64,000 bases of DNA from the NCBI GenBank assembly GCA_951406725.2, contig OX597835.1, positions 46,872,001 to 46,936,000 on the forward strand. The letters run 5' to 3'. Shown here piece by piece: positions 12,441 through 61,150 of the stretch. The DNA is from Octopus vulgaris. Lineage: Eukaryota. Numbering within the stretch: the first letter of the stretch is position 1; every line of letters starts with the position of its first letter. The notes under the pieces were generated by a model. That model saw only the letters and a program-made list of their open reading frames with translations, searched no databases and had not been told where the DNA came from. The position numbers and the translations under genes were made by a program.

Positions 12441-12846
12441 TGAATAACATATACGAGGTGAATCAAAAAGTAAATGTATCATAAATATGATATATAACAA
12501 TATTATAATATGTAATATTTTTGTTCATTTCGATATAAAATGTGTCTGTTTTTCAATAACTTCAACTCAATGCATTCATCCGTTCTGGGTTGATGTATAT
12601 ATCTTTACACCGTCTGATGAAAGACACAGCTCTCGAAACAACGTTGTGTAGCATCACACGTACTTCGTTTACACCATATTACAGAATTTGACTATTTTCG
12701 TGTATCTGTTTAGTGTAGGTTGAATGACGTAGTTCCAAAGAATTTATGATTAATATGAAATCTGTTGAGCATGACTGATGGAAATACTTCACAAGGACTA
12801 ATTTTTGTGGAATACCGATTTGCTCAAGAACACAGTGCGTCGCCCG

Positions 12847-14473: not shown

Positions 14474-15756
14474 CGAGGGGCGTTCAATAAGTAATGCCCC
14501 TGACCCACTTCCCATAGCAGTAGAGCAACGAAACTTGGCGCAGTTATTAGTCTTTTTCTACATAGGAACCACCCAGAGTTACGCATTTCTCCCAGTGTTT
14601 GATGCAGCTCTGGAGACCGTTTTTGTAGAAGACCCCAGCTTGGTCCTCCAACCTGAACGTGACTTCAGAAATCAAGGCTGCATCATCTGGGAAACGCTTT
14701 CCTTTCAAAAACAACTTCATGACTGGGAAGAGGTGAAAATCAGAGGGTGCAAGGTCAGGAAAGTAGGGGGATGGGGGAGGAGTTCATAGCCATACGCCTG
14801 TGCTTCTGATCTGGCGACAAGCGAGTTGTGGACCGGAGCGTTGTCCTGCAGGAGGAGGATGCCTTTGTTGATCTTGCCCCGCCTCTTGATTTTGATAACT
14901 TCTCTTAATTTCCTCAAAAGTGAAGCATAATAAGCTCCTGCAATTGTGGTACCCTTTGCCAGGAAATCTGTCATCACTACTCCGTCCTGGTCCCAGAAGA
15001 CTGTGAGCATGACCTTGCCAGCGGAGGGCTGCACCCTTGCCTTCTTTGGAGGGGGTAAGTCACGGTGCTTCCACTGCATTGACTGGGCTTTGGTCTCTGG
15101 ATCATCGTGATGGACCCAGGTTTCATCCTGTGTAATCAGTCTTTTGAAAAATTTTGACTCATCTTCTTGGCACATCTCCAAATTCACCCTCGAGCACTCG
15201 ACGCGTTATTGCTTCTGGAAAGGCGTGAGCAACCTGGGAATCCATCTGGCAGACACCTTTTGCATATGCAAATGGTCATGAATGATAGTTTCCACAGACC
15301 CGGTACTAATCTTGACCTCATGGGCTATTTGGCGAATAATTATGCGTCGATCTTCCAAAATGGCAGCCTCAACTTGACGGACAGATGCCTCATCAATGGC
15401 AGAAGGGGCGACCAGATCTGGGAGCTGTTTCCACAGAGTTCCGACCATGTCTGAATTCACGATGCCAGCGTTTTACAAGGTCATATGATGGGGCATCATC
15501 ACCATAAGTTACTTTCGTTTCATCAAAAGTCTCCCGTGGTGTGCGTCCTTTCAAATACAAAAACCGGATCACTGCTCGACACTCAACAGGCTCCATTTCA
15601 CACTTGACTCGGTTCAAACACCAGTAAATCAGAAACCACAATTAATTCAGAACTGTAATTTGCCACTTAGAGATATAAATGATTGCACATGCAAAATTTC
15701 AGCTAGATCAAACAACTGCAAGTGGGTCAGAGGCATTACTTATTGAACGTCCCTCG
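14474..15756 (-). mobile_element. Full-length mariner (D,D34D) element, ~1.28 kb
   Basis: 36-bp TIRs CGAGGG(G/A)CGTTCAATAAGTAATGCC(C/T)CTGACCCACT with 2 mismatches; TA flanks at 14472-3 and 15757-8. Confidence 0.95.
14547..15596 (-). pseudogene. Mariner transposase pseudogene
   Basis: MEPVECRAVIRFL...WIPRLL...ITQDETW...QDNAP...YFPDLAPSD with 34 residues between the 2nd and 3rd Asp. Two frameshifts (after SGRP, at HPP) and one in-frame TAA near 15206. Confidence 0.92.
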
Positions 15757-16296: not shown

Positions 16297-16818
16297 GTAA
16301 AAACAATTAAGATTCAAGTGAGTTCCAATGAATTCACATGAATGCGGTACTTAACTTCGATGCACCAGAAATCTTTGTGGTATAAACCATAAAATAAAGT
16401 GGGGTGATTATAAACAAGAAAAAAGCAACAAGAATGGATTAGTTGTTCAGTACAATTGTTTCATACGAAGAACAGCTTTATTAAAAGCTGCAAATATTGC
16501 AGCAAATACAAGTGTCCCGTATTCATCAGCCAAAACACATATGAGTTTTCCAAACATCCTAGGGGTGAGGCTACACTCATGAAGTATCGAAGAGAGTTCT
16601 ATGAAAAGCAAAGTTAGATTGTAAGCAGACTTCAAATGTTCTCTAATGATGCACAGTTTTATAAAAGGTTTTTAAAAAAGTTTGTTAGCTTCACAGAAAA
16701 GGTAAATCCATTCATAATAATGCAGGTGTAATTTCCGGAGATATGAGGAGATACTTCATACTCAGAGAAGATGAATGTATCCATAATAATGTAGATGTAA
16801 TTTCCTGATATATGAGAA

Positions 16819-16900: not shown

Positions 16901-18905
16901 GGTTCCGGTTGTTCAGTTGTCTTCTCTGTGCCCTTGAAGTCGTCACGCTGGTGTGCAGCGGACGAAAGTTGAATTGAAAGAAGCTCTACCGTAAGGTAAG
17001 ACTTTTTGCTTTTTGAGTCCAGTAGGATTTGTTGCCTGTAGGTTTTATTATTTTTTTTTTGTACAAGCAAGGAGTCCTTACTGGATTCGGAGCTTTTTGT
17101 CTGCCGCGGTAGAGACGTGTGTGTTTTCTCACATAACTGAGAAATTGTGTGTGGAGTTTACTCCAAGTTGTTTTTGAAATTTTTTGTGCCGACGTGGATT
17201 TTACAAAGGATTTGCCAGAAGTACCTTTCGGCCTAAAATTATTTTCTTTGCCAACATTTGAACTCTTCTTCAAATCTATCATTTAATTTGGAACAAAAAC
17301 TTTATTGAACTGTTATTTTTATTTTTTCTTCCCTTCTGTTGCGTCTTTCTTTCTTATTTTGTGTATCTTTCTTCATTTTAAAACTCTATTGTGAACTGTA
17401 TTTGAACTTTTTTTTAAAATGGCAAAGGAATTATTAGTGTGGGAATTGACACCTCCCAAGACATGGCTCGAAGAGTTCGAAAGGAAGGCGGTGGTATTGA
17501 GGACTTATTCTAAGTCGCTCGATACCATAACCGTCTTCCCGAAAGCCACGATTCTGAAAGAGCTGGCAGAATACATGCCAGCTATTAAATTCATTTCACG
17601 GGGAGTCAAATATGCAACGGTCTGGTTGCTATTTGACTCCCCCCAAGAAGCTTGCGAGTTTGCAAGCCGGCCCCTCGAGGGCAATGGAATTATGTTCCTT
17701 CCCAGTTATTGTGGGAAGAAGTTGACGAGGGCTTGGGTCTGCGGTTTGCCACCCGGAATTGAGCCCGAGTGGATAGACGATTCTATCCACTGGGGTCTGA
17801 GTGGTAGCAGTACCAAGCTGCTCAACGTAAAAATTTTGCCTGCGGCTGATTGGGAGGGCTCAAAAGCTGTTTTGACCCTATGGACCCAATCAGCCGAAAG
17901 TCTGGTTTTCCCAGATTTTTTTAGGATGGCCGGGTCTAGGTATCCGGTGATGCTCGAGGGACGCTCCCCCAAGTGTCACCTGTGCCTAGAAACCGTCCAC
18001 ATCAAGAAAAACTGCCCCAAGAACCAAAATAGGGTCGTGGAGCAGTTAATAGAGGAATCACTCCCTGCTCCCTCAATGGAGGGAGAGAAGGAGGAGGATG
18101 ACGAGGAGGTTTCAACCTCCTCGAAAAAACGGAAGCGAAACGTGGGCAACAATGGTTGCCCACCGAAGGACCCGAGGGCTGTGGGACAAAAGGAGGACCT
18201 GCTGGAGACAGTAAAGGAACACCACCCTCCCGCGACCCAAGGGGAAAAGAAAAGAAAAAAGAAAAACGGGACATTGCCGGCAGGTTGTGACACGCTGCCG
18301 GCGTGTCCCGATGCTCCTTCGGCGGGTGTGCCGCTGGAAGAGGAATTTGTGGTCCTCTTCCACAAGGGAGGAACTCTGCAGAATGTAATCAGAAAATTTG
18401 AGAGGAAGGGCCGGTGGGAGGGGCTTCTGTCCTGCACGGAGGACTCTGAGTGGCCATCGCAGGTACTGCGGATGTCATATGGGAAACTGATCTGAGCAGG
18501 ATAATGAATTCTTTCCCGGCGGACTCCTTTAGATATATGACCAAGTGGTCCGGCTCAAAACTGACTAGGTGCTTCGAAGAAGCGAGGAGCCTGGTCGGAC
18601 AGAAAACTTGAAGTGTTGGACGTTTGGACTCAAAAAGAGTCTACAAAATCCAAAAAAAAAAGTGAGAGGATTATTGCCTCGTGTGTGAGTTTTTTTTTAA
18701 AACTATGTAAGAGGTTTATCGCCTCACTGTGTTTCTTTAAAAAAATGAAAAAAAGAACAATGTTTTAAAGAAGCGAAAGTCGGCGGGCGCTTTCGTCTTC
18801 TCCCATCCTTATCATCCTTGTATCATCATCATTCATCCCATTAATGTCTGTGTCCAGCCCGCAAGCTTCTCTGTATGCTGCCCTTGTGGCAAATTTAATG
18901 AAATA
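16901..18905 (+). mobile_element. ORF1-only (half-L1/HAL1-like) Tx1/L1-clade non-LTR element
   Basis: 15-bp TSD AAGAAGCTTGCTTCC (16886-16900, 18906-18920), ~520-bp 5' UTR, single ORF1, ~410-bp 3' UTR ending CTGTATGCTGCCCTTGTGGCAAATTTAATGAAATA. No endonuclease or RT coding sequence. Confidence 0.85.
17419..18495 (+). CDS. Tx1/L1-type ORF1 nucleic-acid-binding protein (358 aa) with CCHC zinc knuckle
   Basis: Uninterrupted ORF; RRM-like N-terminal half (ATVWLLF, RAWVCGLPPGI), YPVMLEGRSPK-CHLCLETVHIKKNC (CX2CX4HX4C), then a charged low-complexity tail. Confidence 0.85.
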   Translation: MAKELLVWELTPPKTWLEEFERKAVVLRTYSKSLDTITVFPKATILKELAEYMPAIKFISRGVKYATVWLLFDSPQEACEFASRPLEGNGIMFLPSYCGKKLTRAWVCGLPPGIEPEWIDDSIHWGLSGSSTKLLNVKILPAADWEGSKAVLTLWTQSAESLVFPDFFRMAGSRYPVMLEGRSPKCHLCLETVHIKKNCPKNQNRVVEQLIEESLPAPSMEGEKEEDDEEVSTSSKKRKRNVGNNGCPPKDPRAVGQKEDLLETVKEHHPPATQGEKKRKKKNGTLPAGCDTLPACPDAPSAGVPLEEEFVVLFHKGGTLQNVIRKFERKGRWEGLLSCTEDSEWPSQVLRMSYGKLI

Positions 18906-29010: not shown

Positions 29011-29169
29011 ATATATCATTTCTATATCTCAGAGATGAGGAATTATCTACATTATTTACATTATTTATATTGATTGATTGGTTCTAGTTTCAGCTCACGA
29101 GCTGTGGCCATGCTGGGGCACCGCCATTTTTACAATTGACGGATATTTGTCCTCAACGTGTTTGTTGTT

Positions 29170-29215
29170 AACACAACGTTTCGGCTGATATACCCTCCAG
29201 CCTTCATCAGGTATC
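29170..29215 (-). ncRNA. Type I hammerhead ribozyme (minimal, PLE-type)
   Basis: GATAC CTGATGA A GGCTG-GAGGGTATAT-CAGCC GAAAC GTT GTGTT; perfect 5-bp stem II and intact core. Confidence 0.7.
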
Positions 29216-29374
29216 CTGGGGAAATTTCGAACCTGGGTTTCCTATGGTATTTTTCGATGTTATCATTATTATTAATATTATTATTATTCAGGTCACTGCC
29301 TAGAATCGAACACAGAATCTTGGGGTTAGTAACCCGCACTCATAACCACTAAGCCATATGTCCGTGGGCAGTAA

Positions 29375-29597: not shown

Positions 29598-29645
29598 ATC
29601 GAAAAACACCTTAGGAATGAGAGCCCAGGTTCAAAATTTCCCCAA

Positions 29646-29691
29646 GACACCTGATGAAGGCTGGAGGGTACATCAACCGAAACGTTGTGTT
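29646..29691 (+). ncRNA. Type I hammerhead ribozyme (minimal, PLE-type)
   Basis: GACAC CTGATGA A GGCTG-GAGGGTACAT-CAACC GAAAC GTT GTGTT; one mismatch in stem II. Confidence 0.65.
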
Positions 29692-30065
29692 AACAACAAA
29701 CAAGATGAGGACAAATATCCGCCAATTGTAAATAATGTAAATAATGAATGTATGAGATGTTCTGTATAAAATCAGGTTAGCATCAGAGTAAAGTAATACT
29801 CAATACTTTTAATAGAGTACAAGTTTATTAACATTCACAAAGTTCATAGTGACGTCGACGTTTCAGCTTGTTCGTGTTCATCAGACAGCGGTTTTTTGGT
29901 TTACGTCTTCGTATCTTGGAGGATCGTGAAAGGAGATGAATGGATCCTAGTGTTAGAATTCGGAAGAATAAGTACGGGGTCGTTTTGTTCGATTAAATCC
30001 TTCAAGGCATGGCCCAGCAAGGCTGCAGTCCAATGGTCTGTCCAAATACAAGTAAAAGGTATTAT

Positions 30066-38821: not shown

Positions 38822-41270
38822 TGTTTCTTTATTAGCCACACAGGGCTGCACACAGATAGAACAAATTACAAGGTAGAGCTTTTCTTTTGAAGGTAAAAAA
38901 AAAAAATAAAAATAAAAATAAAATAAAATAAAATAAAAAAAAAAATAAAAAAGGGGGGGTCGATCAAAAGGGATCGTAAAAGGAGAGAAAGAGGACAAAA
39001 AAGGGGGGGTAAAAAAAAGGGGGAGAGGAAAAAAATTGATCAATAGGGATCGTTATCACAGAAATGTCAATATGAAGTGTAAAGGGGAGGACAGGTGAGG
39101 TTTACCCGTGGAAAGAAAAGCCTACGGAAAAGACCACGGTAACCTCGGTCAATGAAGTCACATGTTATATTTCTTTTTTCTTTTTTTTTTTTGCAAATAA
39201 GCAACTCTCTGTATTAATTTTTACGGTTCATAGAATCATAGTCAAGGTGGCTTCGTCATTCATACGTGCCATCCTTGCTACATTCACCCATCTTTTTTTA
39301 AAACATTCACTAGACAAAACTTGCCTTTCTACACTCACTTTTTTCTTCAAGTGATACTTGAAGAAGTTGATGAGAGATTGACCAGAGAGGAAAGTGTTTG
39401 TCTCTAATCCTTTCAGGCGCGTCCACCAGATACATTCTTTCGCCATAGCCACAAGTATGATAAAATTAGCTCTTCCTTCCCGTTTGAAGGAAGGAGGCGT
39501 GACGATATTAACGATAGACTCGGCTGATAAACCGCCACGTCCCACACGTGACAGCAGTCGTTCGACATAAGCCCACAGGTGGGAAATTGCTGGACACTGC
39601 ACGATTGCGTGCAGAGCGGTTTCGTCGCTCTGCCCGCATCTCGGGCAGGTCGGCCCCGTGTTTCTCGAGCCATGCCTATAGAGCTTATCCCGAACGGGTA
39701 GCGCTTCTCGGTAGCACCGCCAGGCCAGGGATCTCTGGAAGTTGTCCATAGGTCCCGGGCCGAAAGTCGTTTGAAACAGGCGGGTCAGGTATTTCTCGTC
39801 GACGCCCAGGTTTGCCCCGAGCTCGTCGTCGTACCTCCCCTCCACTAATCCCCTATAGAATGCTTTGGTTGTGTTGAAGTCACTCAAGGTCGACCCGGGA
39901 CGGCAGAGTTGCTTGAGAGCAACGCGACACTCGCGGTGCCATTCGCCCTTCCTCGGCCTCTTTTTGATCCACGACTGTAGTTCGGTCATGGAGACGAGTT
40001 GCGGGAATGCGTGCCTCACAAACGGCGACCACACCTGTTCACCGTCGTCTACATAGAGCCGGAGATGTCGCAGTCTCAGCGCGTGTCTGCGCATCATCAA
40101 CCACGGCATGCCCAGCCCTCCTTTTAACGGGTGTTGACAGCAAATGGATCGCCTGACCATCGGGACGCATCCTTTCCACAAGAAGCGGAAGAGGATGCGT
40201 TCTAGTTTGGTGATGGTAGGGTCGGGACAAGGTACGACGGTCAGGCGGTAGTAGATGATGGACGCGATGTACGCGTTCACCACCTCCGCCCGACCTTTTA
40301 GGGACAGTTTCCTCTCGGCCCATTGCTGGGCGAGAGTGACCACCCTACTCGTTTTCTTGTTCCAGTTCTTCTCCATTTGGAGGTCCGGACCGAACCAGAC
40401 CCCGAGCAACTCAACCGGGCCGTCTGTCCAGCGTCCCACGACGGAGGTACTGGTGGACGGCATGGGCTTGCTTCTCCAGGTGCCGAGCCGCAAGCCCACT
40501 GACTTTTCCCGGTTGATTTTTGCTTCTGTCACCGCTTCGTAGTCTTTCAGTGTCTCGCCGACCCGCTCGATGTGCTCGTGGCTTGACACTATGACGGTGA
40601 CGTCGTCCGCGTATGCAGACACGCTCGTCCCGCATCCCAATTCTCGCGGGATGCCCCTTAGAGTCGCCAGCTTCCGCAGTAGTGGCTCAAGAGTCAATAC
40701 GTATAGAAGCGCCGAGAGGGGGCATCCCTGACGGACCGAACGTGCAATGTCGAAAGGTCTCGATAGATGTCCATTTACGCGAATTACCGAACGGATGCCT
40801 CTGTACAAGGCAGCTATCCAGCCGCGGAAGACGGGACCGAAACCAGCCGCTCTCAGGACTGCCTCCAAGTATCGATGGTCTACCCTATCAAAGGCTTTCG
40901 ATTGATCCAAGTTGATCAGGGTCCCACCCATGCCAGGTTCGTTAACTACCCTGTCTATGATGTAGCGCATCAGATGGAGGTTGTCATGGATGCTCCGGCC
41001 CGGCACGGCGCACGTTTGTACGTTGTCGACCAGTTTCTCGATGACAAGCGCCAACCTCTTGGCTAACACCTTTGTCAAAATTTTCAGGTCTGCATTGAGC
41101 AGTGTGATTGGTCTAAAGTTATCTATAATGTTTCCCTTGTTTAGATCTTTCTTCAGCAGAGTTACAGCTCCTCGACTCACAAAACCGGGTATGCTCCCGT
41201 TTTGCTGCCAGTTGCAGTATACCGCTGCCAAGACGTCTCCAAACAAGTCTGGCATACAATTGTAAAACTC
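38821..41270 (-). mobile_element. 5'-truncated Tx1/L1-clade non-LTR retrotransposon inserted in (GATA)n
   Basis: Flanked by (GATA)n at 38759-38821 and 41271-41429. The 3' UTR ends TCTGTGTGCAGCCCTGTGTGGCTAATAAAGAAACAT. Confidence 0.9.
39228..41270 (-). CDS. Tx1/L1-type ORF2 (RT domain + C-terminal zinc-binding domain), 5'-truncated, uninterrupted
   Basis: [66 protein letters not shown]; no endonuclease domain. The ORF-track N-terminus (LSIY repeats) is microsatellite. Confidence 0.93.
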
Positions 41271-41337
<67 letters not shown>

Positions 41338-41346
41338 GTAGGTAGG

Positions 41347-41429
<83 letters not shown>

Positions 41430-41574
41430 TCGGCCGGCAAGAAATAACAGACAAATACACATCTGAAATTATAATTTAAGAGATTCAAAAAGAGAACACA
41501 GCATGGTCACAGCTCGTGAGCTGAAACTAGATAAAATGAAAATGAAAATGAAAATTATGCCTGCTAAATATTGA

Positions 41575-54982: not shown

Positions 54983-55459
54983 TAATATATATACATATAT
55001 ATATACATATACATATATATATATGTATATATATATGTATATATATATATATATGTATATATATATGTATATATATATATGTATATATATATTGATAAAA
55101 CGGTAAGATAACAAAAGAAAGAAAGAGACCTCAATATTATGTAAATAGAGGAAATTTATCTATACAATATGTTACATTACTCGGTAGTCAAGATAAAACT
55201 CTGAGTTTCAGATGCCGAAGTGGAAATCCACAACACCATCTCTTCGGTTATCTGGCTATTTGAAAACGTTATGAAAAAATACCGTTAAAAATGAAGGGAA
55301 ATTACTCTGTTATAACTCTGCTTTGCCTGCGTACTTATACATCGCTCGCATTTTTCGTCATAAAAATTATATAAAAATACATAAAAATATATAAAAATAT
55401 ATGAAAATATATAAAATCTTCTTGGGACATAACACAGAAAGCATGTTCTATCCGTTTTC

Positions 55460-57046
55460 GACCACAAAGAAAACTTCCTTTCCAATCCTAAATGTAGGCT
55501 TATCAACCCAGCCAAGTCAGAACTAGGGATTATTAGCAAAGAAATTTTAGATAAAATAAATACGAAAATTAAGACCGATACTAGGCTAGTGCAATGGTCC
55601 AATAGTATAGAAGTCGTAGACTGGTTTAAAGCTATTAAGAATAAGAAAAAAGCGAGGTTTACACAATTCGATATTGTTGATTTTTATGCCTCTATCTCTA
55701 AAGAACTGCTAGATAAAGCCCTAATCTTCGCTAGTGACTTCATAGAAATTAGTACCAATGATAAGGATATAATCTTCCATGCTAGAAAGACATTACTTTT
55801 CAGTGAGAATGCAAAGTGGGTAAAAAACACCGACACGGAGGGCGCTTTCGATGTGAGCATGGGTTCATATGATGGGGCAGGCATCTGTGATCTAATTGGA
55901 CTCTTTCTCCTAGATACCTTCAGTAAGACATTCCCTAACGTACATTTCGCCATCTACAAAGATGATGCCCTCGCCTTAACAGCTAATACAAATGGACCAG
56001 CACAAGATCGTTTTAGGAAGGATATTATCCAGTTAATGAAACACTTCGGACTTAGTATAACTATAGACACTAACCTGACGGTTGTCAATTTCTTAGACGT
56101 TTCCTTAGATCTTAATAATAATATTTATAAGCCTTATAGGATGCCCAATGATAGACTAAGTTATATTAATGTAGGTTCATGCCATCCCCCTATAGTATTC
56201 AAAAATTTAGTTAAAAATATTAGTAAGAGGATTTCTAGCCTCTCATCTAATGAGGACATCTTCAATAGCGTTGCCCCAGTTTATAATAAAGCTTTAAAAG
56301 ATAGTGGTTTTAGCGAAAAAATAAAATATACACCTATCACCAGCCCAACAATAAGGAAAAGGAATAATAGAAATAGGAAGGTCATCTGGTTTACGCCCCC
56401 TTACTCACCCGAGGTGGCCTTCAATATAGGTAAATATTTCCTAGCACTGATAGATAGACATTTTCCAGTTAACCATGCTTATAGGAAACTCTTCAATAGA
56501 CACAATTTAAAAATTAGTTTTAGTTCAACTACCAATTTTAAAAACATAATCAATCATAACATACAAAAAACACAAGAAGAAAACAGCTGTTCATGCAGGA
56601 ATAAAGAATTGTGCCCGCTAAATGGAGCTTGCATGTCCAAGACCATCATATATGAAGCTACCGTAAACTCTATAACCACTAAAGACACCGTTTTGATGAA
56701 GAAATACGTGGGCCTGACAGAGGGTAATTTCAAGGCCAGGTTCAATAACCACACTTTGAGCTTTAGGCACTGGAACAAAAGAAAAGCGACACAATTATCC
56801 AATCATATTTGGTCTTTAAGAGATAAAGGTGTCGATTATAACATACAATGGAAGATTTTGGCCAGATGTAAGCCCTATACTAACGGCAGCGGAAGGTGCG
56901 GTTTATGCGACATGGAGAGATGGCTTATCTGGAAAAGCAGCTTAGACCCTACCACATGTCTAAATACAAGGACAGAACTTTTCGGATCATGCCCACATGT
57001 GACTAAATTTCTGTTACGTTTTTGGTCCCCTAAAGAAAACGGATAG
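55460..57046 (+). CDS. Penelope-like RT + GIY-YIG endonuclease (open frame from the truncation point)
   Basis: DHKENF..PKCRLINPAKSELG, FTQFDIVDFYASI, SMGSYDG, IYKDDAL, NFLDVSLDL, TIIYEATV...KYVGLTEGNFKARFNNH, CGLCDMER; no stops. The ORF track starts later at an alternative codon (55589). Confidence 0.92.
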   Translation, partial: DHKENFLSNPKCRLINPAKSELGIISKEILDKINTKIKTDTRLVQWSNSIEVVDWFKAIKNKKKARFTQFDIVDFYASISKELLDKALIFASDFIEISTNDKDIIFHARKTLLFSENAKWVKNTDTEGAFDVSMGSYDGAGICDLIGLFLLDTFSKTFPNVHFAIYKDDALALTANTNGPAQDRFRKDIIQLMKHFGLSITIDTNLTVVNFLDVSLDLNNNIYKPYRMPNDRLSYINVGSCHPPIVFKNLVKNISKRISSLSSNEDIFNSVAPVYNKALKDSGFSEKIKYTPITSPTIRKRNNRNRKVIWFTPPYSPEVAFNIGKYFLALIDRHFPVNHAYRKLFNRHNLKISFSSTTNFKNIINHNIQKTQEENSCSCRNKELCPLNGACMSKTIIYEATVNSITTKDTVLMKKYVGLTEGNFKARFNNHTLSFRHWNKRKATQLSNHIWSLRDKGVDYNIQWKILARCKPYTNGSGRCGLCDMERWLIWKSSLDPTTCLNTRTELFGSCPHVTKFLLRFWSPKENG

Positions 57047-57240
57047 AACATGCTTTCTGTGTTATGTCCCAAGAAGATTTTATATATTTTTATATATTTT
57101 TATATATTTTTATGTATTTTTATATAATTTTTATGACGAAAAATGCGAGCGATGTATAAGTACGCAGGCAAAGCAGAGTTATAACAGAGTAATTTCCCTT
57201 CATTTTTAACGGTATTTTTTCATAACGTTTTCAAATAGCC

Positions 57241-57303
57241 AGATAACCGAAGAGATGGTGTTGTGGATTTCCACTTCGGCATCTGAAACTCAGAGTTTTA
57301 TCT
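57241..57303 (+). ncRNA. Atypical hammerhead-like motif in the PLE terminal repeat (mirror copy 55191-55253, -)
   Basis: Stem I AGATAA/TTATCT, core CCGAAGA, stem II GATG...CATC with inner hairpin GTGG-ATTT-CCAC, extra T before GAAA, stem III ACTC-A-GAGT, GUU triplet. Confidence 0.5.
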
Positions 57304-57345
57304 TGACTACCGAGTAATGTAACATATTGTATAGATATGTATATA

Positions 57346-57421
<76 letters not shown>

Positions 57422-58269
57422 CATATATATGTATATATATATATATATAATTTATATATATATATATATATATATACATATCTTTTATATGTTTCATGTA
57501 TGGATGTATGTATGTATGTATATGTCCATGATATGACATCTGCACATAGGTATATAAATGCATATATCTATTTATATGTAGGTTTGTGTGTATATATATA
57601 TATATATATATATACGTGTCTGTGTCTGTGTATATGTGCGTGTGTATACATACATACGTACATATAATAAATTAATTAGCAGTAACTTCAACATTTCGCC
57701 GAAATATTGTTTTGTGGTGAATGTCCTATGATGCGGTGCGGTGTAGGGTGTTATGGACGTAAGTATGGAATAACGCCGCGGTGATTTTGACCTGTGATCA
57801 CCCTTAACTATTCTCATACAATTCGCATACCACCCATCAGGATGATTTTTAATAGTTTCTGCCGCTCTCTTACAAACCCATCAAGGTTGTCAAACATCTG
57901 TTTGTGTGAAGGTGTCTAAGAGATTGTATGTGTTTGTAAATGACTGCTTTAAAAGTGTTGTCAATGTGTCTTCATGTGTAAAGCTAAATGAGAGCGGCGT
58001 GTATGCTTGTGTGTGTGTACGAGTGTATTTGTATGTATTGTGTAGTGTGGAGTCTATATCAATGCGTGTGTATATATAAGTGCACCGGTGCGTGTTTATG
58101 TAGGAGTATACATATATGTGTATATATATATATACGCACACGTGCGCACACATATATACATGCACACGCACATATACATTTAGGTGAAACGTGTGTTTAC
58201 ATAAGCGTGTACTTGTATGAACATGCTCGTATTTATATATATATATCTATATGTATGTATGTATGTATC

Positions 58270-58480
58270 TGTTTTTAGTCATTAGACCGCGATCATGCTG
58301 GGGGGGGGGATTTTAGTCGAATGAACTGACCCCAGTACATGTTTTAAAGCCTGGTATTTATTCTATCGAATTCTTTTGCCGAACCGCTCTGTCACGGGCG
58401 CGTAAACAGACTAACAGCTGTTGTCAAGCGGTGGTGGGGAGACAAATGCAAAAACACAGAAACACAGACACATAAATATA
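58270..58480 (-). mobile_element. SINE family A 3' half, diverged
   Basis: TTAGTCATTAGACCGCGATCATGCTG...GCCGAACCGCT...TTGTCAAGCG. Confidence 0.6.
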
Positions 58481-58667
58481 TGCATTTAAAACCTCCTTCT
58501 TCCTTTCCTTTCCTGAGCCCTGGGCGTCCAATCACACCACACTTGTTTCACGTTCTCGCGTTGTTGTGTTTTCTCTTTGTTCATGTTTGGATTAACTATA
58601 TATATATAGCGACAGTGGACGCTGGAAAAAGTATAAGTATTTGTGAAGGAAATCTAATTCTCGCCGA

Positions 58668-58737
58668 CAACTGTGATTGTCACACGCTGATGAGAGGTCA
58701 ATACCTCGAAACTCGAGTCCGTGTGTATCATAAGTTG
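58668..58737 (+). ncRNA. Canonical extended type I hammerhead ribozyme, copy 1 (predicted cleavage after C58719)
   Basis: Stem I CACACG/CGTGTG, extended by TGTGAT/ATCATA and CAAC/GTTG across a TGT/T internal loop; CTGATGA; stem II GAGG-TCAATA-CCTC; GAAA; palindromic ACTCGAGT stem III; GUC triplet. Confidence 0.92.
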
Positions 58738-59019
58738 AAGACGGGAAGGATGACTTCCCTTTGCAAATACTGACAGGACACAGAAAGTGTGTCTATGGCC
58801 AGCTGGAGGAGTGTGTCCTCCTGGGGCTAAAAACTACAGTAGCATCCACCCTTAGGGGTAGCCATATTGAAATGGCAAATATACGTCACGATGTGTTACC
58901 GCTACTGTATATAACTCACTCTGATATTTATCATTGTTTGATTTCACTTTTTCAATATCAGCGACAGTGGACGCTGGAAAAAGTATAAGTATTTGTGAAG
59001 GAAATCTAATTCTCGCCGA

Positions 59020-59089
59020 CAACTGTGATTGTCACACGCTGATGAGAGGTCAATACCTCGAAACTCGAGTCCGTGTGTATCATAAGTTG
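59020..59089 (+). ncRNA. Canonical extended type I hammerhead ribozyme, copy 2 (predicted cleavage after C59071)
   Basis: Identical to copy 1, 352 nt downstream. Confidence 0.92.
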
Positions 59090-59485
59090 AAGACGGGAAG
59101 GATGACTTCCCTTTGCAAATACTGACAGGACACAGAAAGTGTGTCTATGGCCAGCTTGAGGAGTGTGTCCTCCTGGGGCTAAAAACTACAGTAGCATCCA
59201 CCCTCAGGGGTAGCCATATTGAAATGGCAAATATACGTCACGATATATATATATTCATTTGAATCTAAATTTTGCTGAACTTATATATATATATATGTAT
59301 GTATGTATGTATGTATAATGTGCATATATGGGTACAGGACGTCAGCAATTGTCTAAACAACATGAAATACGTAGACAAAAGAATTAAATAGGTAAACAAC
59401 GAGAAAAAAACCGTTATTGTTTACGTATTTACCTCGTTTGTCAACATATTTCATGTTGTTTACACAGTTGCTGACGTCCTGTACC

Positions 59486-59522
<37 letters not shown>

Positions 59523-59862
59523 GTAGTAACACCACCACCCCAGACGCCTAAAGCATAGAAAAAATGACTAGAAGAAAGAATTTGGAAAAACATCTGGTCA
59601 TTAGATTTCTGACGAAAGGTCAACTATAAAAATGACTTCACAAAACACTCCTTTAACACCCCACCACTTCCCAACTCCACCCCCAATAAAGTATCTTGTG
59701 TTGACCATTCACTACTTCCTTTCATCTATCATTCATCAACAGTCTTTCATTCCCACACTGATTTTAAAAAAAATCAAAACACACCCAAAGCCCATATAGA
59801 ATCACAAAACCTCAAATCCTCAGATCTGTTTGACAACGAATACGACAAAGTCCTCCAAAGAA

Positions 59863-60064
59863 GTTAGTTAGTTAGTTAGTTAATTTGGCTCAAAAGCAAA
59901 TAGCAAGGCCATGTAGGGAGACATGGAGTTAAGTACAGGGTGGTGTTCATGTAAAGAGTTCAGGCCACTTGAGGTCAAGGGAGGCTTTGAACAAAGCGGT
60001 CGTCGGCATCTTCACCATCTCGTCTGGCAGCTTGTTCCACGGATCCGCAACCCGGACGGAGAAA
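59863..60064 (-). mobile_element. CR1/L2-group LINE 3' end with (CTAA)n tail
   Basis: FSVRVADPWNKLPDEMVKMPTTALFKASLDLKWPELFT*; sibling of 35304-35490. Confidence 0.75.
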
Positions 60065-60315
60065 GTTCCACTTCTTCGATTGAGATGAAATCGTCGCAAG
60101 AAATATTTTTTTAATCCTCCACATACAAGTTAACAAAGAACTTACTAGAACTATGAACTAGAATTTACATAATTAAATAATCAAAAAATAATAAATTAAA
60201 CTGATTAGAATTGCCAGTGATGTCATTCTTTTTCTTTTCTCAAATGTGAGTGTGGTAAATGAACTCTCGTCTAAATTACGCACCTTGGAAAGGGTCCTCT
60301 ACTATAACCTTACCA

Positions 60316-60806
60316 CACATATTCATATATTGACAGGGGAGATAACCGTTCTATAAGCGAGGCTAGATCACTGGATTAGACTAGTTTCGCCAGTAAATTT
60401 GCAGACTCGTCAGCAATGATCACTCCATCGCCGAATAGTTTAGCTAAATGCAGATTGTCAGTGTATATATTTACCTTATAACTTTATGATTCGGTTAGGG
60501 AAATGCTAATGTGAAAATTATAAAATCACACAGGCAGCACCGTCAGCCACAATTAGTGCCGACTGGATTTTCCCTCTTTGATTTTATTCTGAGTGTACCT
60601 ACCGACGTTATTTTGTAATTTTCCCATTTCGCTAACCCAACCATAGACATATACCGTACTGACAGTTTGGATTAAGCTAAGCCATTCAGCGACGGGCTTG
60701 TCACTGCTCATGAGTCTGCAGTTTTGCAGACAAAAACATAATCTAGTCCGGTGATCTTGCTTCGCTTATGGGGCGGTTATCTCCTTTTTCAGTATATGAA
60801 AATGTG
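60316..60806. mobile_element. Old palindromic element with a decayed hammerhead in each arm
   Basis: Arms ~60316-60525 and ~60608-60806 are reverse complements (roughly 70% by eye). Hammerhead relics at 60366-60421 (-) and 60700-60755 (+). A similar terminal GGAGATAACC segment occurs at ~38690. Confidence 0.65.
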
Positions 60807-60860
60807 CTTTCTTGCAGTTCTAAGTGTTTTAACTCTTATTTCAAGCAATATAGGTGCTAT

Positions 60861-60936
<76 letters not shown>

Positions 60937-60984
60937 AGCTATCTATATATGTACGTATGTATATATCTATGAGCTTGTGATATA

Positions 60985-61150
60985 GTGATTTGGTCAAGTC
61001 TCCGTTATCTAGCGGTTCGGCAAAAAAAGACGGATAAAATAAGTATTGGACTCAAAAAGAAAGTAAGCTCTGCGGTGGATTTGCCTGACTAAAACCTTCC
61101 AGCCGGTACTCCAGCATGGCCACAGTCTAATGAGTGAAACAGGTAAAAGG
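60985..61150 (+). mobile_element. SINE family A 3' fragment
   Basis: AGCGGTTCGGCAAAA...ATAAGTATTGG...CTCCAGCATGGCCACAGTCTAATGAGTGAAACAGGTAAAAG. Confidence 0.65.

What the first reader, a model, noticed from the sequence alone, without database searches (positions are those of the whole stretch)
58609..59244. Retrozyme: 352-bp tandem unit with a canonical self-cleaving hammerhead, predicted to make a 352-nt circular RNA
Seen in sequence: a head-to-tail 1.8-mer (period 352, two substitutions) sits in a (TA)n tract. Each unit has a textbook type I hammerhead: CUGAUGA/GAAA core, G10.1-C11.1, GUC site, 4-bp stem II with a UCAAUA loop, and a long stem I with an internal loop 6 bp from the core. The rest of the unit is a chain of small hairpins (GGGAAG/CTTCCC, GACACA/TGTGTC, GAGGA/TCCTC, GCCAT/ATGGC). 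Established knowledge: the loop II/stem I bulge geometry matches tertiary-stabilised Schistosoma-type hammerheads. Tandem repeats of a few hundred nt with one type I hammerhead each define non-LTR retrozymes, which give circRNAs in several metazoans and are thought to be mobilised by Penelope-like elements. Inference: one transcript across the locus would be cut twice to release monomer 58720-59071, which could circularise. The palindromic stem III (ACUCGAGU) also allows a dimeric double-hammerhead fold. I do not know of this family being described in cephalopods but could not search.
Basis: partly seen in the sequence, partly recalled or inferred. Interest (0 to 1): 0.92.

Follow-up and report, generated by a model that had tools for sequence, protein, structure and literature searches.

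The report
Cephalopod retrozyme with self-cleaving hammerhead
A 352-bp sequence repeated 1.8 times inside a TA microsatellite carries two intact copies of a classical self-cutting hammerhead RNA motif, making it a good but ordinary example of a "retrozyme", a small mobile element already known from mussels, corals and salamanders, here in an octopus-like genome beside a likely helper retrotransposon.

Summary
Window 58608-59244 is a head-to-tail 1.81-mer of a 352-bp unit with two substitutions. It splits a (TA)n tract into (TA)6 on the left and (AT)6 on the right. Each copy holds a complete type I hammerhead (58681-58725 and 59033-59077), with predicted cuts after C58719 and C59071. Rfam Hammerhead_1 scores 30.3 bits, below its 34-bit cut-off, so routine annotation misses it.

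The predicted 352-nt monomer (58720-59071) folds far better than shuffles (circular MFE -113.6 kcal/mol, z -5.7). The palindromic helix III (ACUCGAGU) makes a double-hammerhead dimer the favoured cofold, as in validated mussel and axolotl retrozymes. Every testable defining feature of non-LTR retrozymes is met. Copy number, transcription, cleavage and circularisation could not be tested, and no relative of the unit was found in any searchable collection.

The window looks octopod. A Hydra-clade Penelope-like element lies 1.27 kb upstream on the same strand, also in (TA)n, with 303-nt arms that are 100% complementary. It is a candidate mobiliser. Verdict: a new member of a known kind, of modest interest.

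The parts
58608..59244 (+). Whole insertion: a 1.81-mer tandem array of a 352-bp unit (unit 1 is 58608-58959; the partial unit 2 is 58960-59244)
   Evidence: Direct repeat with spacing 352 and 99% identity; two substitutions; no other copy in the window
58597..58608 (.). Left flank (TA)6, overlapping the element by 1-2 nt of microhomology
   Evidence: Sequence read. The probability that both ends of a 637-bp segment touch a (TA)>=4 tract in this window is 0.005
59243..59254 (.). Right flank (AT)6, overlapping the element by 2 nt (AT)
   Evidence: Sequence read
58681..58725 (+). Hammerhead ribozyme copy 1 (type I), Rfam-model extent
   Evidence: RF00163, 30.3 bits, E 2.5e-5, full model 1-45; descriptor hit with helix I 6 bp and helix II 4-5 bp
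59033..59077 (+). Hammerhead ribozyme copy 2, identical to copy 1
   Evidence: RF00163, 30.3 bits; descriptor hit
58687..58693 (+). Catalytic core 5' half, CUGAUGA (C3-A9)
   Evidence: Sequence read
58694..58707 (+). Helix II GAGG/CCUC (G10.1-C11.1) capped by the 6-nt loop UCAAUA
   Evidence: The Rfam consensus has the same 4-bp stem and 6-nt loop, and the last four loop letters (AAUA) match
58708..58719 (+). GAAA core 3' half, palindromic helix III ACUCGAGU (A15.1-U16.1, C15.2-G16.2, loop UCGA) and C17; predicted cut between 58719 and 58720
   Evidence: The cofold of two copies uses the 8-bp intermolecular helix III: -33.9 against 2 x -13.3 kcal/mol
58668..58680 (+). 5' strand of the distal helix I extension (58668-77) plus the internal-loop nucleotides UGU (58678-80). 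It pairs with 58727-58737, and the 3' loop nucleotide is U58726
   Evidence: MFE folds
58720..59071 (+). Predicted 352-nt monomer released by two cuts, and the predicted circRNA after ligation
   Evidence: Inferred from the two cut sites. Linear MFE -117.8, z -5.3. Circular MFE -113.6, z -5.7, 62.5% of bases paired. GC 42.9%
55157..57337 (+). Context, not part of the element: a 5'-truncated Hydra-clade Penelope-like element (RT plus GIY-YIG ORF, 55433-57046) with an inverted copy of its own 3' end. It is a candidate autonomous partner and is also inserted in (TA)n
   Evidence: 303-nt arms, 100% complementary. RT fold: Foldseek top hits are telomerase, retron and group II RTs, E 2e-7. GIY-YIG is weak, E 0.016. 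Hydra motifs are present. Relatives carry HHRs and (TA)n flanks

Best explanation
This is a genomic copy of a non-autonomous, non-LTR 'retrozyme': a 352-nt non-coding unit with one canonical type I hammerhead ribozyme, inserted as a 1.8-mer into a (TA)n microsatellite.

Proposed mechanism:
1. A transcript reading through the + strand contains two hammerheads 352 nt apart. The sequence is shown; transcription is inferred.
2. Each hammerhead cuts after its GUC, at 58719 and 59071. It acts either as a monomer stabilised by a contact between loop 2 and the helix I internal loop, or as a double hammerhead formed through the palindromic helix III. The motif is shown; cleavage is inferred.
3. The released 352-nt RNA, with 5'-OH and 2',3'-cyclic phosphate ends, folds into a branched and largely base-paired molecule. 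A host RtcB-type tRNA ligase then circularises it, as found for mussel, coral and axolotl retrozymes (inferred from PMC7229834).
4. A Penelope-like element's reverse transcriptase copies the circle by target-primed reverse transcription at a nick in (TA)n. Going round the circle more than once gives a greater-than-unit-length tandem copy whose ends do not coincide with the ribozyme cut site. That is what is seen here: the array starts at unit position 241 and ends at about position 173-175 (inferred).

The (TA)n-targeting Hydra-clade PLE 1.27 kb upstream is the most plausible kind of helper, but that link is circumstantial.
For: - Tandem repeat of period 352 with two substitutions.
- Two complete type I HHRs with every invariant core position, G10.1-C11.1, A15.1-U16.1 and GUC, against 0.05-0.06 expected by chance.
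- Helix II and loop 2 have the same size as the Rfam Schistosoma-type consensus, and the loop ends in AAUA in both.
- The 8-nt palindromic helix III has the same architecture as the experimentally active mussel Mg353 (ACGCGCGU), coral Amil224 and axolotl Ax353 (ACACGUGU) retrozyme HHRs. The dimer is the cofold MFE.
- The monomer is strongly structured: z -5.3 linear and z -5.7 circular.
- GC is 42.9%. There is no LTR and no ORF with any homologue.
- The ribozyme is present on the + strand only.
- Both ends abut (TA)6, P about 0.005.
- The array spans two intact cut sites, so the template was circular or multimeric rather than a cleaved linear monomer.
- A Hydra-clade PLE with 100% identical arms, hence recently inserted, lies alongside in (TA)n.
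- In a coral-like contig, a fragment 93% identical to the validated A. millepora retrozyme sits inside (TA)n about 130 nt from a PLE of this same family.
- PLEs and retrozymes co-occur, and retrozymes resemble PLE pLTRs in Xenopus.
Against: - Only one locus was seen in 64 kb.
- No relative of the unit was found in the window, in JGI metagenomes, in IMG/VR or at protein level. A multi-copy family is therefore not demonstrated, and no covariation support exists.
- The Rfam score is below the gathering cut-off.
- In nearest-neighbour energy terms the monomeric HHR fold is 4.7 kcal/mol worse than a competing hairpin in an 86-nt context.
- Monomeric helix III would be only 2 bp with a 4-nt loop, so cleavage may be slow or depend on a dimer.
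- No promoter was identified, and no expression data are available.
- The unit shows no sequence similarity to the neighbouring PLE or to any other HHR-like element in the window.
- The window copy of the PLE has a C at core position 4 of its own HHR-like motif.
- About 5% of the window is (TA)n, so two independent insertions into TA tracts 1.3 kb apart are not strong evidence of a partnership.
Confidence: 0.78

Rival explanations
1. It is a decayed or solo piece of an autonomous Penelope-like element, that is, a tandem pseudo-LTR fragment carrying the PLE's own hammerhead, and not a separate non-autonomous family.
For: PLEs carry HHRs in their terminal repeats, insert as partial tandems and prefer microsatellites. 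Xenopus retrozymes are sister to PLE pLTRs. At least three PLE-like inverted structures with HHR-like motifs lie in this window. The PLE family next door and its relatives use nearly the same helix III, GAAACUC(A)GAGU.
Against: The unit has no detectable similarity to the adjacent PLE or to the other HHR-like elements. No RT or EN coding remnant adjoins the array. The HHR is the canonical long-helix-I form with loops, whereas PLE HHRs are minimal variants. The 352-bp unit size and the strongly paired fold match retrozymes.
Confidence: 0.1
2. It is an inert local tandem duplication or minisatellite that happens to preserve a hammerhead relic. It is neither transcribed nor mobile, and no circRNA is made.
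For: There are only 1.8 copies at a single locus in 64 kb. No relatives were retrievable. No promoter or expression evidence exists.
Against: Both HHR copies are fully intact, and both substitutions lie outside them. The array ends precisely at (TA)n on both sides (P about 0.005), which fits insertion rather than in-place slippage of pre-existing sequence. The flanks carry no diverged unit sequence. The fold stability is far beyond that of shuffles.
Confidence: 0.08
3. It is a chance match or an assembly artefact: the hammerhead is a fortuitous motif, or the duplication was created by mis-assembly.
For: The Rfam score is below the gathering cut-off. TRF did not list the repeat. Microsatellite-rich regions are prone to mis-assembly.
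Against: The motif expectation is 0.05-0.06 per window, against two complete three-helix matches. The two copies differ at two positions, so they are not a literal duplication of the same reads.
Confidence: 0.03

Closest known systems
Non-LTR retrozymes of metazoans (Cervera & de la Pena 2020, PMC7229834), especially the Mytilus galloprovincialis 350-390 bp family (clone Mg353)
   Same: One canonical type I HHR per unit of about 350 bp. Head-to-tail repeats starting from dimers. GC below 45%. Non-coding, with no LTR, PBS or PPT. A strongly self-paired predicted monomer. An 8-nt palindromic helix III (mussel ACGCGCGU, here ACUCGAGU). A mollusc host that also holds PLEs.
   Different: There is no sequence similarity outside the HHR core, as far as can be judged from the single published clone. 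Only one 1.8-mer locus was seen, against about 5000 HHR copies in the mussel. Cleavage and circRNA are unproven here. Loop 2 here resembles the Schistosoma-type consensus, whereas the mussel HHRs are reported to lack most of the conserved loop nucleotides.
Schistosoma mansoni Sm-alpha hammerhead / Rfam Hammerhead_1 (RF00163)
   Same: The same core, a 4-bp helix II with a 6-nt loop ending in AAUA, 6 bp of helix I before an internal loop, a GUC cut site and type I topology.
   Different: 30.3 bits against a 34-bit gathering score. Helix II and helix I sequences are unrelated. No tRNA-like or Pol III SINE features were detected.
Newt satellite 2 / axolotl retrozymes (Ax330, Ax353)
   Same: Tandem units of 330-353 bp. 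A weak, palindromic helix III that allows an extended double-hammerhead, which is the efficient form in vitro. Here the dimer is the cofold MFE.
   Different: Those are vertebrate elements with huge arrays (up to 120 000 copies) and HHRs with deviant cores such as CUGAGGA. Here the core is fully canonical and a loop-loop contact is plausible, so monomeric cleavage may suffice.
Penelope-like elements, Hydra clade (Craig et al. 2021, PMC8557442)
   Same: Insertion into (TA)n. A hammerhead with helix III GAAACUC(A)GAGU. Greater-than-unit or rearranged insertion products.
   Different: PLEs encode RT plus GIY-YIG and carry minimal HHRs near their 3' end. The 352-bp unit encodes nothing and shares no sequence with the PLE next to it.
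Plant LTR retrozymes and viroid-like or HDV-like circular RNAs
   Same: HHR-bounded RNA that is cut out and circularised.
   Different: Plant retrozymes have type III HHRs inside LTRs, PBS and PPT sites, 600-1000 nt and GC above 55%. Viroid-like agents are not DNA-encoded and usually carry ribozymes in both polarities. Here there is one polarity only, and the element is genome-encoded.

Membership tests
Hammerhead ribozyme, type I (Rfam RF00163) | Conserved core CUGANGA ... GAAA ... with A15.1-U16.1 and a cleavable N-U-H triplet | tested here: met
   CUGAUGA, GAAA, A15.1-U16.1 and GUC are present in both copies
Hammerhead ribozyme, type I (Rfam RF00163) | Three helices around the core with helix I open-ended; G10.1-C11.1 closing helix II | tested here: met
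   Helix I is 6 bp plus an extension of about 10 bp. Helix II is 4 bp (GAGG/CCUC). Helix III is 2 bp with a UCGA loop, or 8 bp in a dimer
Hammerhead ribozyme, type I (Rfam RF00163) | Score at or above Rfam's curated gathering threshold | tested here: not met
   30.3 bits against 34; nothing was reported at gathering threshold
Hammerhead ribozyme, type I (Rfam RF00163) | Tertiary contact between loop 2 and the helix I internal loop | not testable with these tools
   The geometry is compatible: 6 bp to the internal loop and a 6-nt loop 2 ending in AAUA, as in the model consensus.
Hammerhead ribozyme, type I (Rfam RF00163) | Compensatory base changes across homologues | not testable with these tools
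   The two copies are identical in the HHR, and no homologue was retrieved
Hammerhead ribozyme, type I (Rfam RF00163) | Self-cleavage activity | not testable with these tools
   Requires in vitro transcription
Non-LTR retrozyme (PMC7229834; bioRxiv 10.64898/2026.07.22.740005) | Type I HHR inside a short tandem repeat of 150-450 bp, with at least two consecutive units carrying complete HHRs | tested here: met
   Period 352 with two complete HHRs. The HHR MFE of -13.3 kcal/mol is below the -5 criterion
Non-LTR retrozyme (PMC7229834; bioRxiv 10.64898/2026.07.22.740005) | Low GC (below 45-50%); non-coding; no LTR, PBS or PPT | tested here: met
   GC is 42.9%. The only ORFs are 75 aa or shorter and have no homologue. 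There are no terminal repeats other than the tandem itself
Non-LTR retrozyme (PMC7229834; bioRxiv 10.64898/2026.07.22.740005) | Monomer predicted to be highly self-paired | tested here: met
   Circular MFE -113.6 kcal/mol, z -5.7, 62.5% of bases paired
Non-LTR retrozyme (PMC7229834; bioRxiv 10.64898/2026.07.22.740005) | Dispersed multi-copy family in the genome | tested here: inconclusive
   There is no second locus in the 64-kb window. The genome itself is not searchable with these tools, and there were no hits in metagenome, viral or protein collections
Non-LTR retrozyme (PMC7229834; bioRxiv 10.64898/2026.07.22.740005) | Co-existence with autonomous Penelope-like elements | tested here: met
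   A Hydra-clade PLE lies at 55157-57337. Further PLE-like inverted structures are also present
Non-LTR retrozyme (PMC7229834; bioRxiv 10.64898/2026.07.22.740005) | Expression as linear and circular RNA of unit length | not testable with these tools
   No transcriptome access
Penelope-like element pseudo-LTR / minimal PLE hammerhead | Minimal HHR lacking a real helix III and loop contacts, located in the terminal repeat of an RT plus GIY-YIG element and homologous to it | tested here: not met
   The HHR is canonical with an extended helix I and loops. The unit shares no similarity with the PLE or the other HHR-like elements in the window
Sm-alpha-like tRNA-derived SINE with hammerhead | tRNA-related 5' part with a Pol III promoter | tested here: not met
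   ARAGORN finds no tRNA in the window. There is no tRNA hit in 58500-59350 even at E<=10
Viroid-like / HDV-like replicating circular RNA | Ribozymes in both polarities; not encoded in host DNA | tested here: not met
   The HHR is on the + strand only. The element is integrated in eukaryotic DNA between transposons

The most novel reading that the evidence does not exclude
The locus preserves both halves of a working system: a young cephalopod retrozyme family and the specific autonomous element that mobilises it. On this reading, retrozyme circRNAs are copied by the (TA)n-targeting Hydra clade of Penelope-like elements. That would explain why this retrozyme, and a fragment of the validated Acropora retrozyme in an unrelated coral-like contig, each sit inside (TA)n tracts next to PLEs of this one family. 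The long-standing question of which enzyme retrotransposes metazoan retrozymes would then become directly testable with a defined RT/EN and RNA pair.
Probability: 0.15. Interest if true: 0.6.

Novelty: new member of a known kind. Interest (0 to 1): 0.36.

Why it matters
Retrozymes are the main natural route by which animals make circular RNAs with a ribozyme instead of back-splicing. They can reach about 1% of total RNA in mussels.

A cephalopod family would extend the class to a lineage known for unusual RNA biology and repeat-rich genomes. It would also show that routine Rfam annotation misses such elements, since this one scores 30.3 bits against a 34-bit cut-off.

The practical value of this locus lies in its clean anatomy. 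It has two intact ribozymes, defined cut sites and a defined (TA)n target. A very recently inserted (TA)n-specific Hydra-clade PLE sits beside it. Together these give a concrete candidate pair for testing how retrozyme circles are reverse-transcribed and integrated. By itself, though, the find is an expected addition to a described family.

Tried and rejected
- TRF on 57000-61000 did not report the period-352 array. The repeat finder did.
- Rfam at gathering threshold found nothing in the window. A whole-window E-value scan was swamped by microsatellite look-alikes of miRNA families. Only a local scan showed the HHRs.
- I searched for relatives of the unit in four ways, all negative: blastn against the window; the HHR-plus-helix-III pattern in IMG/VR, 0 hits; the same pattern in JGI metagenomes, 36 loci, all unrelated outside the core; and the unit's 75-aa ORF as a protein proxy, no candidates.
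- Exact look-up of four window ORFs to name the organism found none in the collection. The organism was instead inferred from LINE RT homologues.
- Similarity of the unit to the PLE 3' end, the whole PLE and the other HHR-like elements was not above shuffles.
- Extension of the repeat into the flanks was not above shuffles.
- Pfam and PDB sequence searches did not recognise the neighbour's RT. Only the AlphaFold model plus Foldseek did.
- Rfam does not support the other HHR-like motifs at 12614, 16451, 29178/29651 and 60374, so they are reported only as motifs.
- (TA)n context or Hydra-PLE ORFs near the metagenomic HHR loci: none found.
- The bacterial promoter/terminator scan is irrelevant for a eukaryote and was empty.
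- I considered and rejected a tRNA-SINE origin and a viroid-like replicon, because the ribozyme has one polarity only.
Full report
**1. What is there**

Window 58608-59244 is a head-to-tail repeat. Copies 58608-58892 and 58960-59244 lie 352 nt apart and are 99% identical. Direct comparison gives exactly two substitutions, 58805 G / 59157 T and 58853 T / 59205 C. The array is therefore 637 bp, or 1.81 units.

TRF did not list the array. The flanks carry no diverged unit sequence beyond what shuffles give. No other copy exists in the 64-kb window.

The array interrupts a TA microsatellite. TATATATATATA (58597-58608) lies on the left and ATATATATATAT (59243-59254) on the right, with 1-2 nt of overlap at each junction. 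(TA)>=4 tracts cover 4.9% of the window. The chance that both ends of a segment of this length touch such a tract is 0.005.

**2. The ribozyme**

Both copies contain the same 45-nt motif:
- CACACG (helix I, 5' strand)
- CUGAUGA (core)
- GAGG-UCAAUA-CCUC (helix II with its loop)
- GAAA (core)
- C-UCGA-G (helix III)
- U, then C17, then the cut, then CGUGUG (helix I, 3' strand)

The two motifs lie at 58681-58725 and 59033-59077. Every invariant hammerhead position is present, including G10.1-C11.1, A15.1-U16.1 and a GUC triplet. The predicted cuts fall after 58719 and 59071.

Rfam's Hammerhead_1 model aligns over its full length at 30.3 bits, E 2.5e-5 in an 851-nt search. That is below the 34-bit gathering score, so the default scan reports nothing.

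The motif is far beyond chance. The core pattern is expected 0.05 times per window. A descriptor of my own that requires all three helices gave 0.06 hits per shuffled window.

Helix I continues past a small internal loop (5' UGU, 3' U) six base pairs from the core. It runs into a further helix of about 10 bp and on into the body of the unit. Helix II and its loop have the same size as the Rfam, Schistosoma-type, consensus, and the loop ends in the same AAUA. The geometry needed for the loop-loop tertiary contact is therefore present. Whether the contact forms cannot be tested here.

**3. Monomer or dimer**

As a monomer, helix III is only A-U and C-G closed by UCGA. In an 86-nt context, enforcing the hammerhead fold costs 4.7 kcal/mol relative to a competing hairpin. 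Nearest-neighbour energies ignore the core's non-canonical and tertiary contacts, so this figure is an upper bound on the penalty.

The helix III segment ACUCGAGU is a perfect palindrome. When two copies are co-folded, the minimum-energy structure is the double hammerhead with an 8-bp intermolecular helix III, at -33.9 against 2 x -13.3 kcal/mol.

The same 8-nt palindromic design is found in retrozyme hammerheads that were shown to cleave: mussel Mg353 (GAAACGCGCGUC), axolotl Ax353 (GAAACACGUGUA) and coral Amil224 (a 10-nt palindrome). Axolotl and newt motifs cut efficiently only as dimers, whereas the invertebrate ones cut as monomers. Either mode is open here.

**4. The unit as a whole**

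The 352-nt RNA between the two cut sites (58720-59071) has these properties:
- GC is 42.9%.
- It has no ORF longer than 75 aa, and that ORF has no homologue among 5.8 billion clusters.
- It folds far better than dinucleotide shuffles: linear MFE -117.8 kcal/mol, z -5.3; circular MFE -113.6, z -5.7, with 62.5% of bases paired.
The fourth (GGGAAG/CUUCCC) is replaced by pairing within the long closing helix.
- No ribozyme is found on the minus strand.

**5. Classification**

The published definition of metazoan non-LTR retrozymes has these elements (PMC7229834):
- a canonical type I hammerhead within tandem repeats of 150-450 bp, from dimers to large multimers
- GC below 45-50%
- no LTR, PBS or PPT
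- a highly self-paired RNA of 170-400 nt
- co-existence with Penelope-like elements

[quoted passage not shown] All of these that can be tested on one locus are met.

Four things are not shown: that the family is multi-copy, that it is transcribed, that it cleaves, and that it circularises. Searches for relatives all failed. The pattern CTGATGA-N12-18-GAAACTCGAGTC found nothing in IMG/VR. In JGI metagenomes it found 36 loci, and these share only the ribozyme core. No eukaryotic genome collection is available to these tools.

**6. Host and prior knowledge**

The window is a transposon- and microsatellite-rich eukaryotic region. Its intact LINE RT (39228-41462, minus strand) has as best named relatives proteins of Argonauta hians (64% identity) and Acanthosepion pharaonis. 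This supports an octopod-like cephalopod origin.

In the searchable literature I found no description of retrozymes in cephalopods. The giant-squid genome paper lists 235 Rfam 'hammerhead 1' loci without comment. Retrozymes are described as widespread 'from molluscs to arthropods'. A cephalopod family is therefore expected rather than surprising.

**7. How it probably got there**

The array contains two intact cut sites, and its ends (unit positions 241 and about 173-175) do not coincide with them. The template for integration was therefore not a cleaved linear monomer. It was either a circle copied for 1.8 turns or an uncleaved multimer. The first is the model proposed for retrozymes (discussion).

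The target is (TA)n. PLEs are the proposed mobilisers and are known to prefer microsatellites, with (TA)n favoured by Naiad and by almost all Hydra-clade families.

**8. The neighbour**

A 2181-bp insertion (55157-57337) lies 1.27 kb upstream on the same strand, also inside TA-rich microsatellite. It consists of a 5'-truncated ORF (55433-57046) bounded by 303-nt arms that are 100% complementary. This is the 'inverted 5'-truncated copy' structure typical of PLE insertions, and the perfect arms imply a very recent event.

Pfam and PDB sequence searches see only a weak GIY-YIG match, E 0.016. An AlphaFold model (mean pLDDT 76.8) does better. Its best matches are telomerase, retron, DRT and group II intron reverse transcriptases, E 2e-7.

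The copy and its family consensus carry the diagnostic Hydra-clade motifs listed by Craig et al.:
- RWK
- DKT in place of DKG
- a CxCX5C linker
- CxxC ... E ... N ... CxH in the endonuclease
- no CCHH

Relatives are 45-52% identical, with 813 hits of about 700 aa. The four loci I fetched show the same architecture, the same (TA)n flanks, and a hammerhead 110-150 nt after the stop codon, of the form CUGAYGA-helix II-GAAACUC(A)GAGUA. The window copy reads CCGAAGA...GAAACUCAGAGUU, that is, a C at core position 4. Its own ribozyme may therefore be impaired.

The 352-bp unit shares no sequence with this PLE. The partnership is suggested only by the shared target, the proximity and a similar helix III.

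One independent observation points the same way. In the coral-like locus L039, a 74-nt fragment 93% identical to the validated Acropora millepora retrozyme Amil224 sits inside (TA)n, about 130 nt downstream of a PLE of this same family. The metagenomic HHR loci showed no such context. This makes two cases, not a statistic.

**9. Rivals**

- PLE pseudo-LTR fragment. This is disfavoured by the lack of similarity to any PLE-like sequence here, by the absence of coding remnants and by the canonical, non-minimal ribozyme. It can only be excluded genome-wide.
- Inert local duplication. This is disfavoured by the clean (TA)n junctions, the intact ribozymes and the exceptional fold stability.
- Chance or mis-assembly. 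This is disfavoured by the motif statistics and by the two differences between the copies.

**10. Verdict**

This is a well-preserved non-LTR retrozyme insertion in a cephalopod-like genome, and so a new member of a known kind. Its activity is unproven. The adjacent, freshly inserted, (TA)n-specific Hydra-clade PLE is a useful lead for the open question of who mobilises retrozymes. The evidence for that link is circumstantial.

Noticed in passing
window 55157-57337 (+): A Hydra-clade Penelope-like element. It has a 5'-truncated RT plus GIY-YIG ORF (55433-57046) bounded by 303-nt arms that are 100% complementary, and it is inserted in (TA)n. Pfam does not recognise the RT, but the AlphaFold/Foldseek model matches telomerase, retron and group II RTs. 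Its own hammerhead-like motif reads CCGAAGA...GAAACUCAGAGUU, with a C at core position 4.
   Followed up: yes
L039:864-937 (coral-like ENA contig ERZ25067862): A 74-nt fragment 93% identical to the published Acropora millepora retrozyme Amil224, including its hammerhead. It is embedded in (TA)n on both sides, about 130 nt downstream of the 3' end of a Hydra-type PLE of the same family as the window's.
   Followed up: partly
window 29129-29237 (-) and 29624-29732 (+): An inverted pair, 109-nt arms, 93% complementary. Each arm carries a hammerhead-like motif, CUGAUGA-A-GGCUG...CAGCC-GAAACGUU, with possible helix I GACAC/GUGUU. The arms point outward like PLE 3' ends. Between them lie a tRNA-like SINE piece and (ATT)n/(CTA)n microsatellites. 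Rfam does not recognise the motif. A degenerate relative lies at 12614-12639 (+).
   Followed up: partly
window 60316-60462 (-) and 60658-60806 (+): Another outward-facing inverted pair (73-81% complementary), 1.1 kb downstream of the retrozyme and ending at an (AT)28 tract (60863-60918). The left arm keeps CUGACGA...GAAACUAGUC. The right arm keeps a perfect 7-bp helix II (GUCUGCA/UGCAGAC) but has a mutated core. It looks like a decayed PLE terminal pair. Rfam gives no hit.
   Followed up: partly
window 16451-16529 (-): A hammerhead-like motif: CUGAUGA, a 7-bp helix II with a long loop, GAAA, the 8-nt palindrome ACAAUUGU, a cut triplet GUA and a 5-bp helix I. It has A10.1-U11.1 instead of G-C and is not recognised by Rfam.
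   Followed up: partly
window 59319-59497: A long hairpin-forming inverted repeat just downstream of the retrozyme (81-nt arms, 85% complementary, 17-nt spacer), bounded by (TATG)n and (CA)n/(TA)n. It looks MITE-like. Rfam's weak 'MIR8562' hit there is far below threshold.
   Followed up: no
window 39228-41462 (-), 14717-15187 (-), 17419-18495 (+): Three further transposon features. First, an intact-looking LINE RT ORF (744 aa, RVT_1 plus zf-RVT) whose closest named relatives are from Argonauta hians (64%) and Acanthosepion pharaonis, which is the basis for calling the window octopod-like. Second, a mariner-type transposase fragment (Transposase_1). Third, a 358-aa ORF with a CCHC-like knuckle and no Pfam match.
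   Followed up: partly
L001 (JGI contig Ga0049110_10014201), minus strand 273-304 and 935-966: Two identical canonical type I hammerheads, CUGAUGAGGCCCGAUAGGCCGAAACUCGAGUC, lie 662 nt apart on a 1275-bp metagenomic contig. This is a retrozyme-like tandem from an unidentified host with the same helix III palindrome as the window element. About 20 contigs of metagenome Ga0126336 share another HHR family, GGUUCACUGAAGAACC.
   Followed up: no
whole window: E-value Rfam scans of this microsatellite-rich DNA return hundreds of spurious miRNA-family matches (mir-297, mir-3149, mir-1277 and others), all far below their gathering scores. (TA)>=4 tracts alone cover 4.9% of the window.
   Followed up: no
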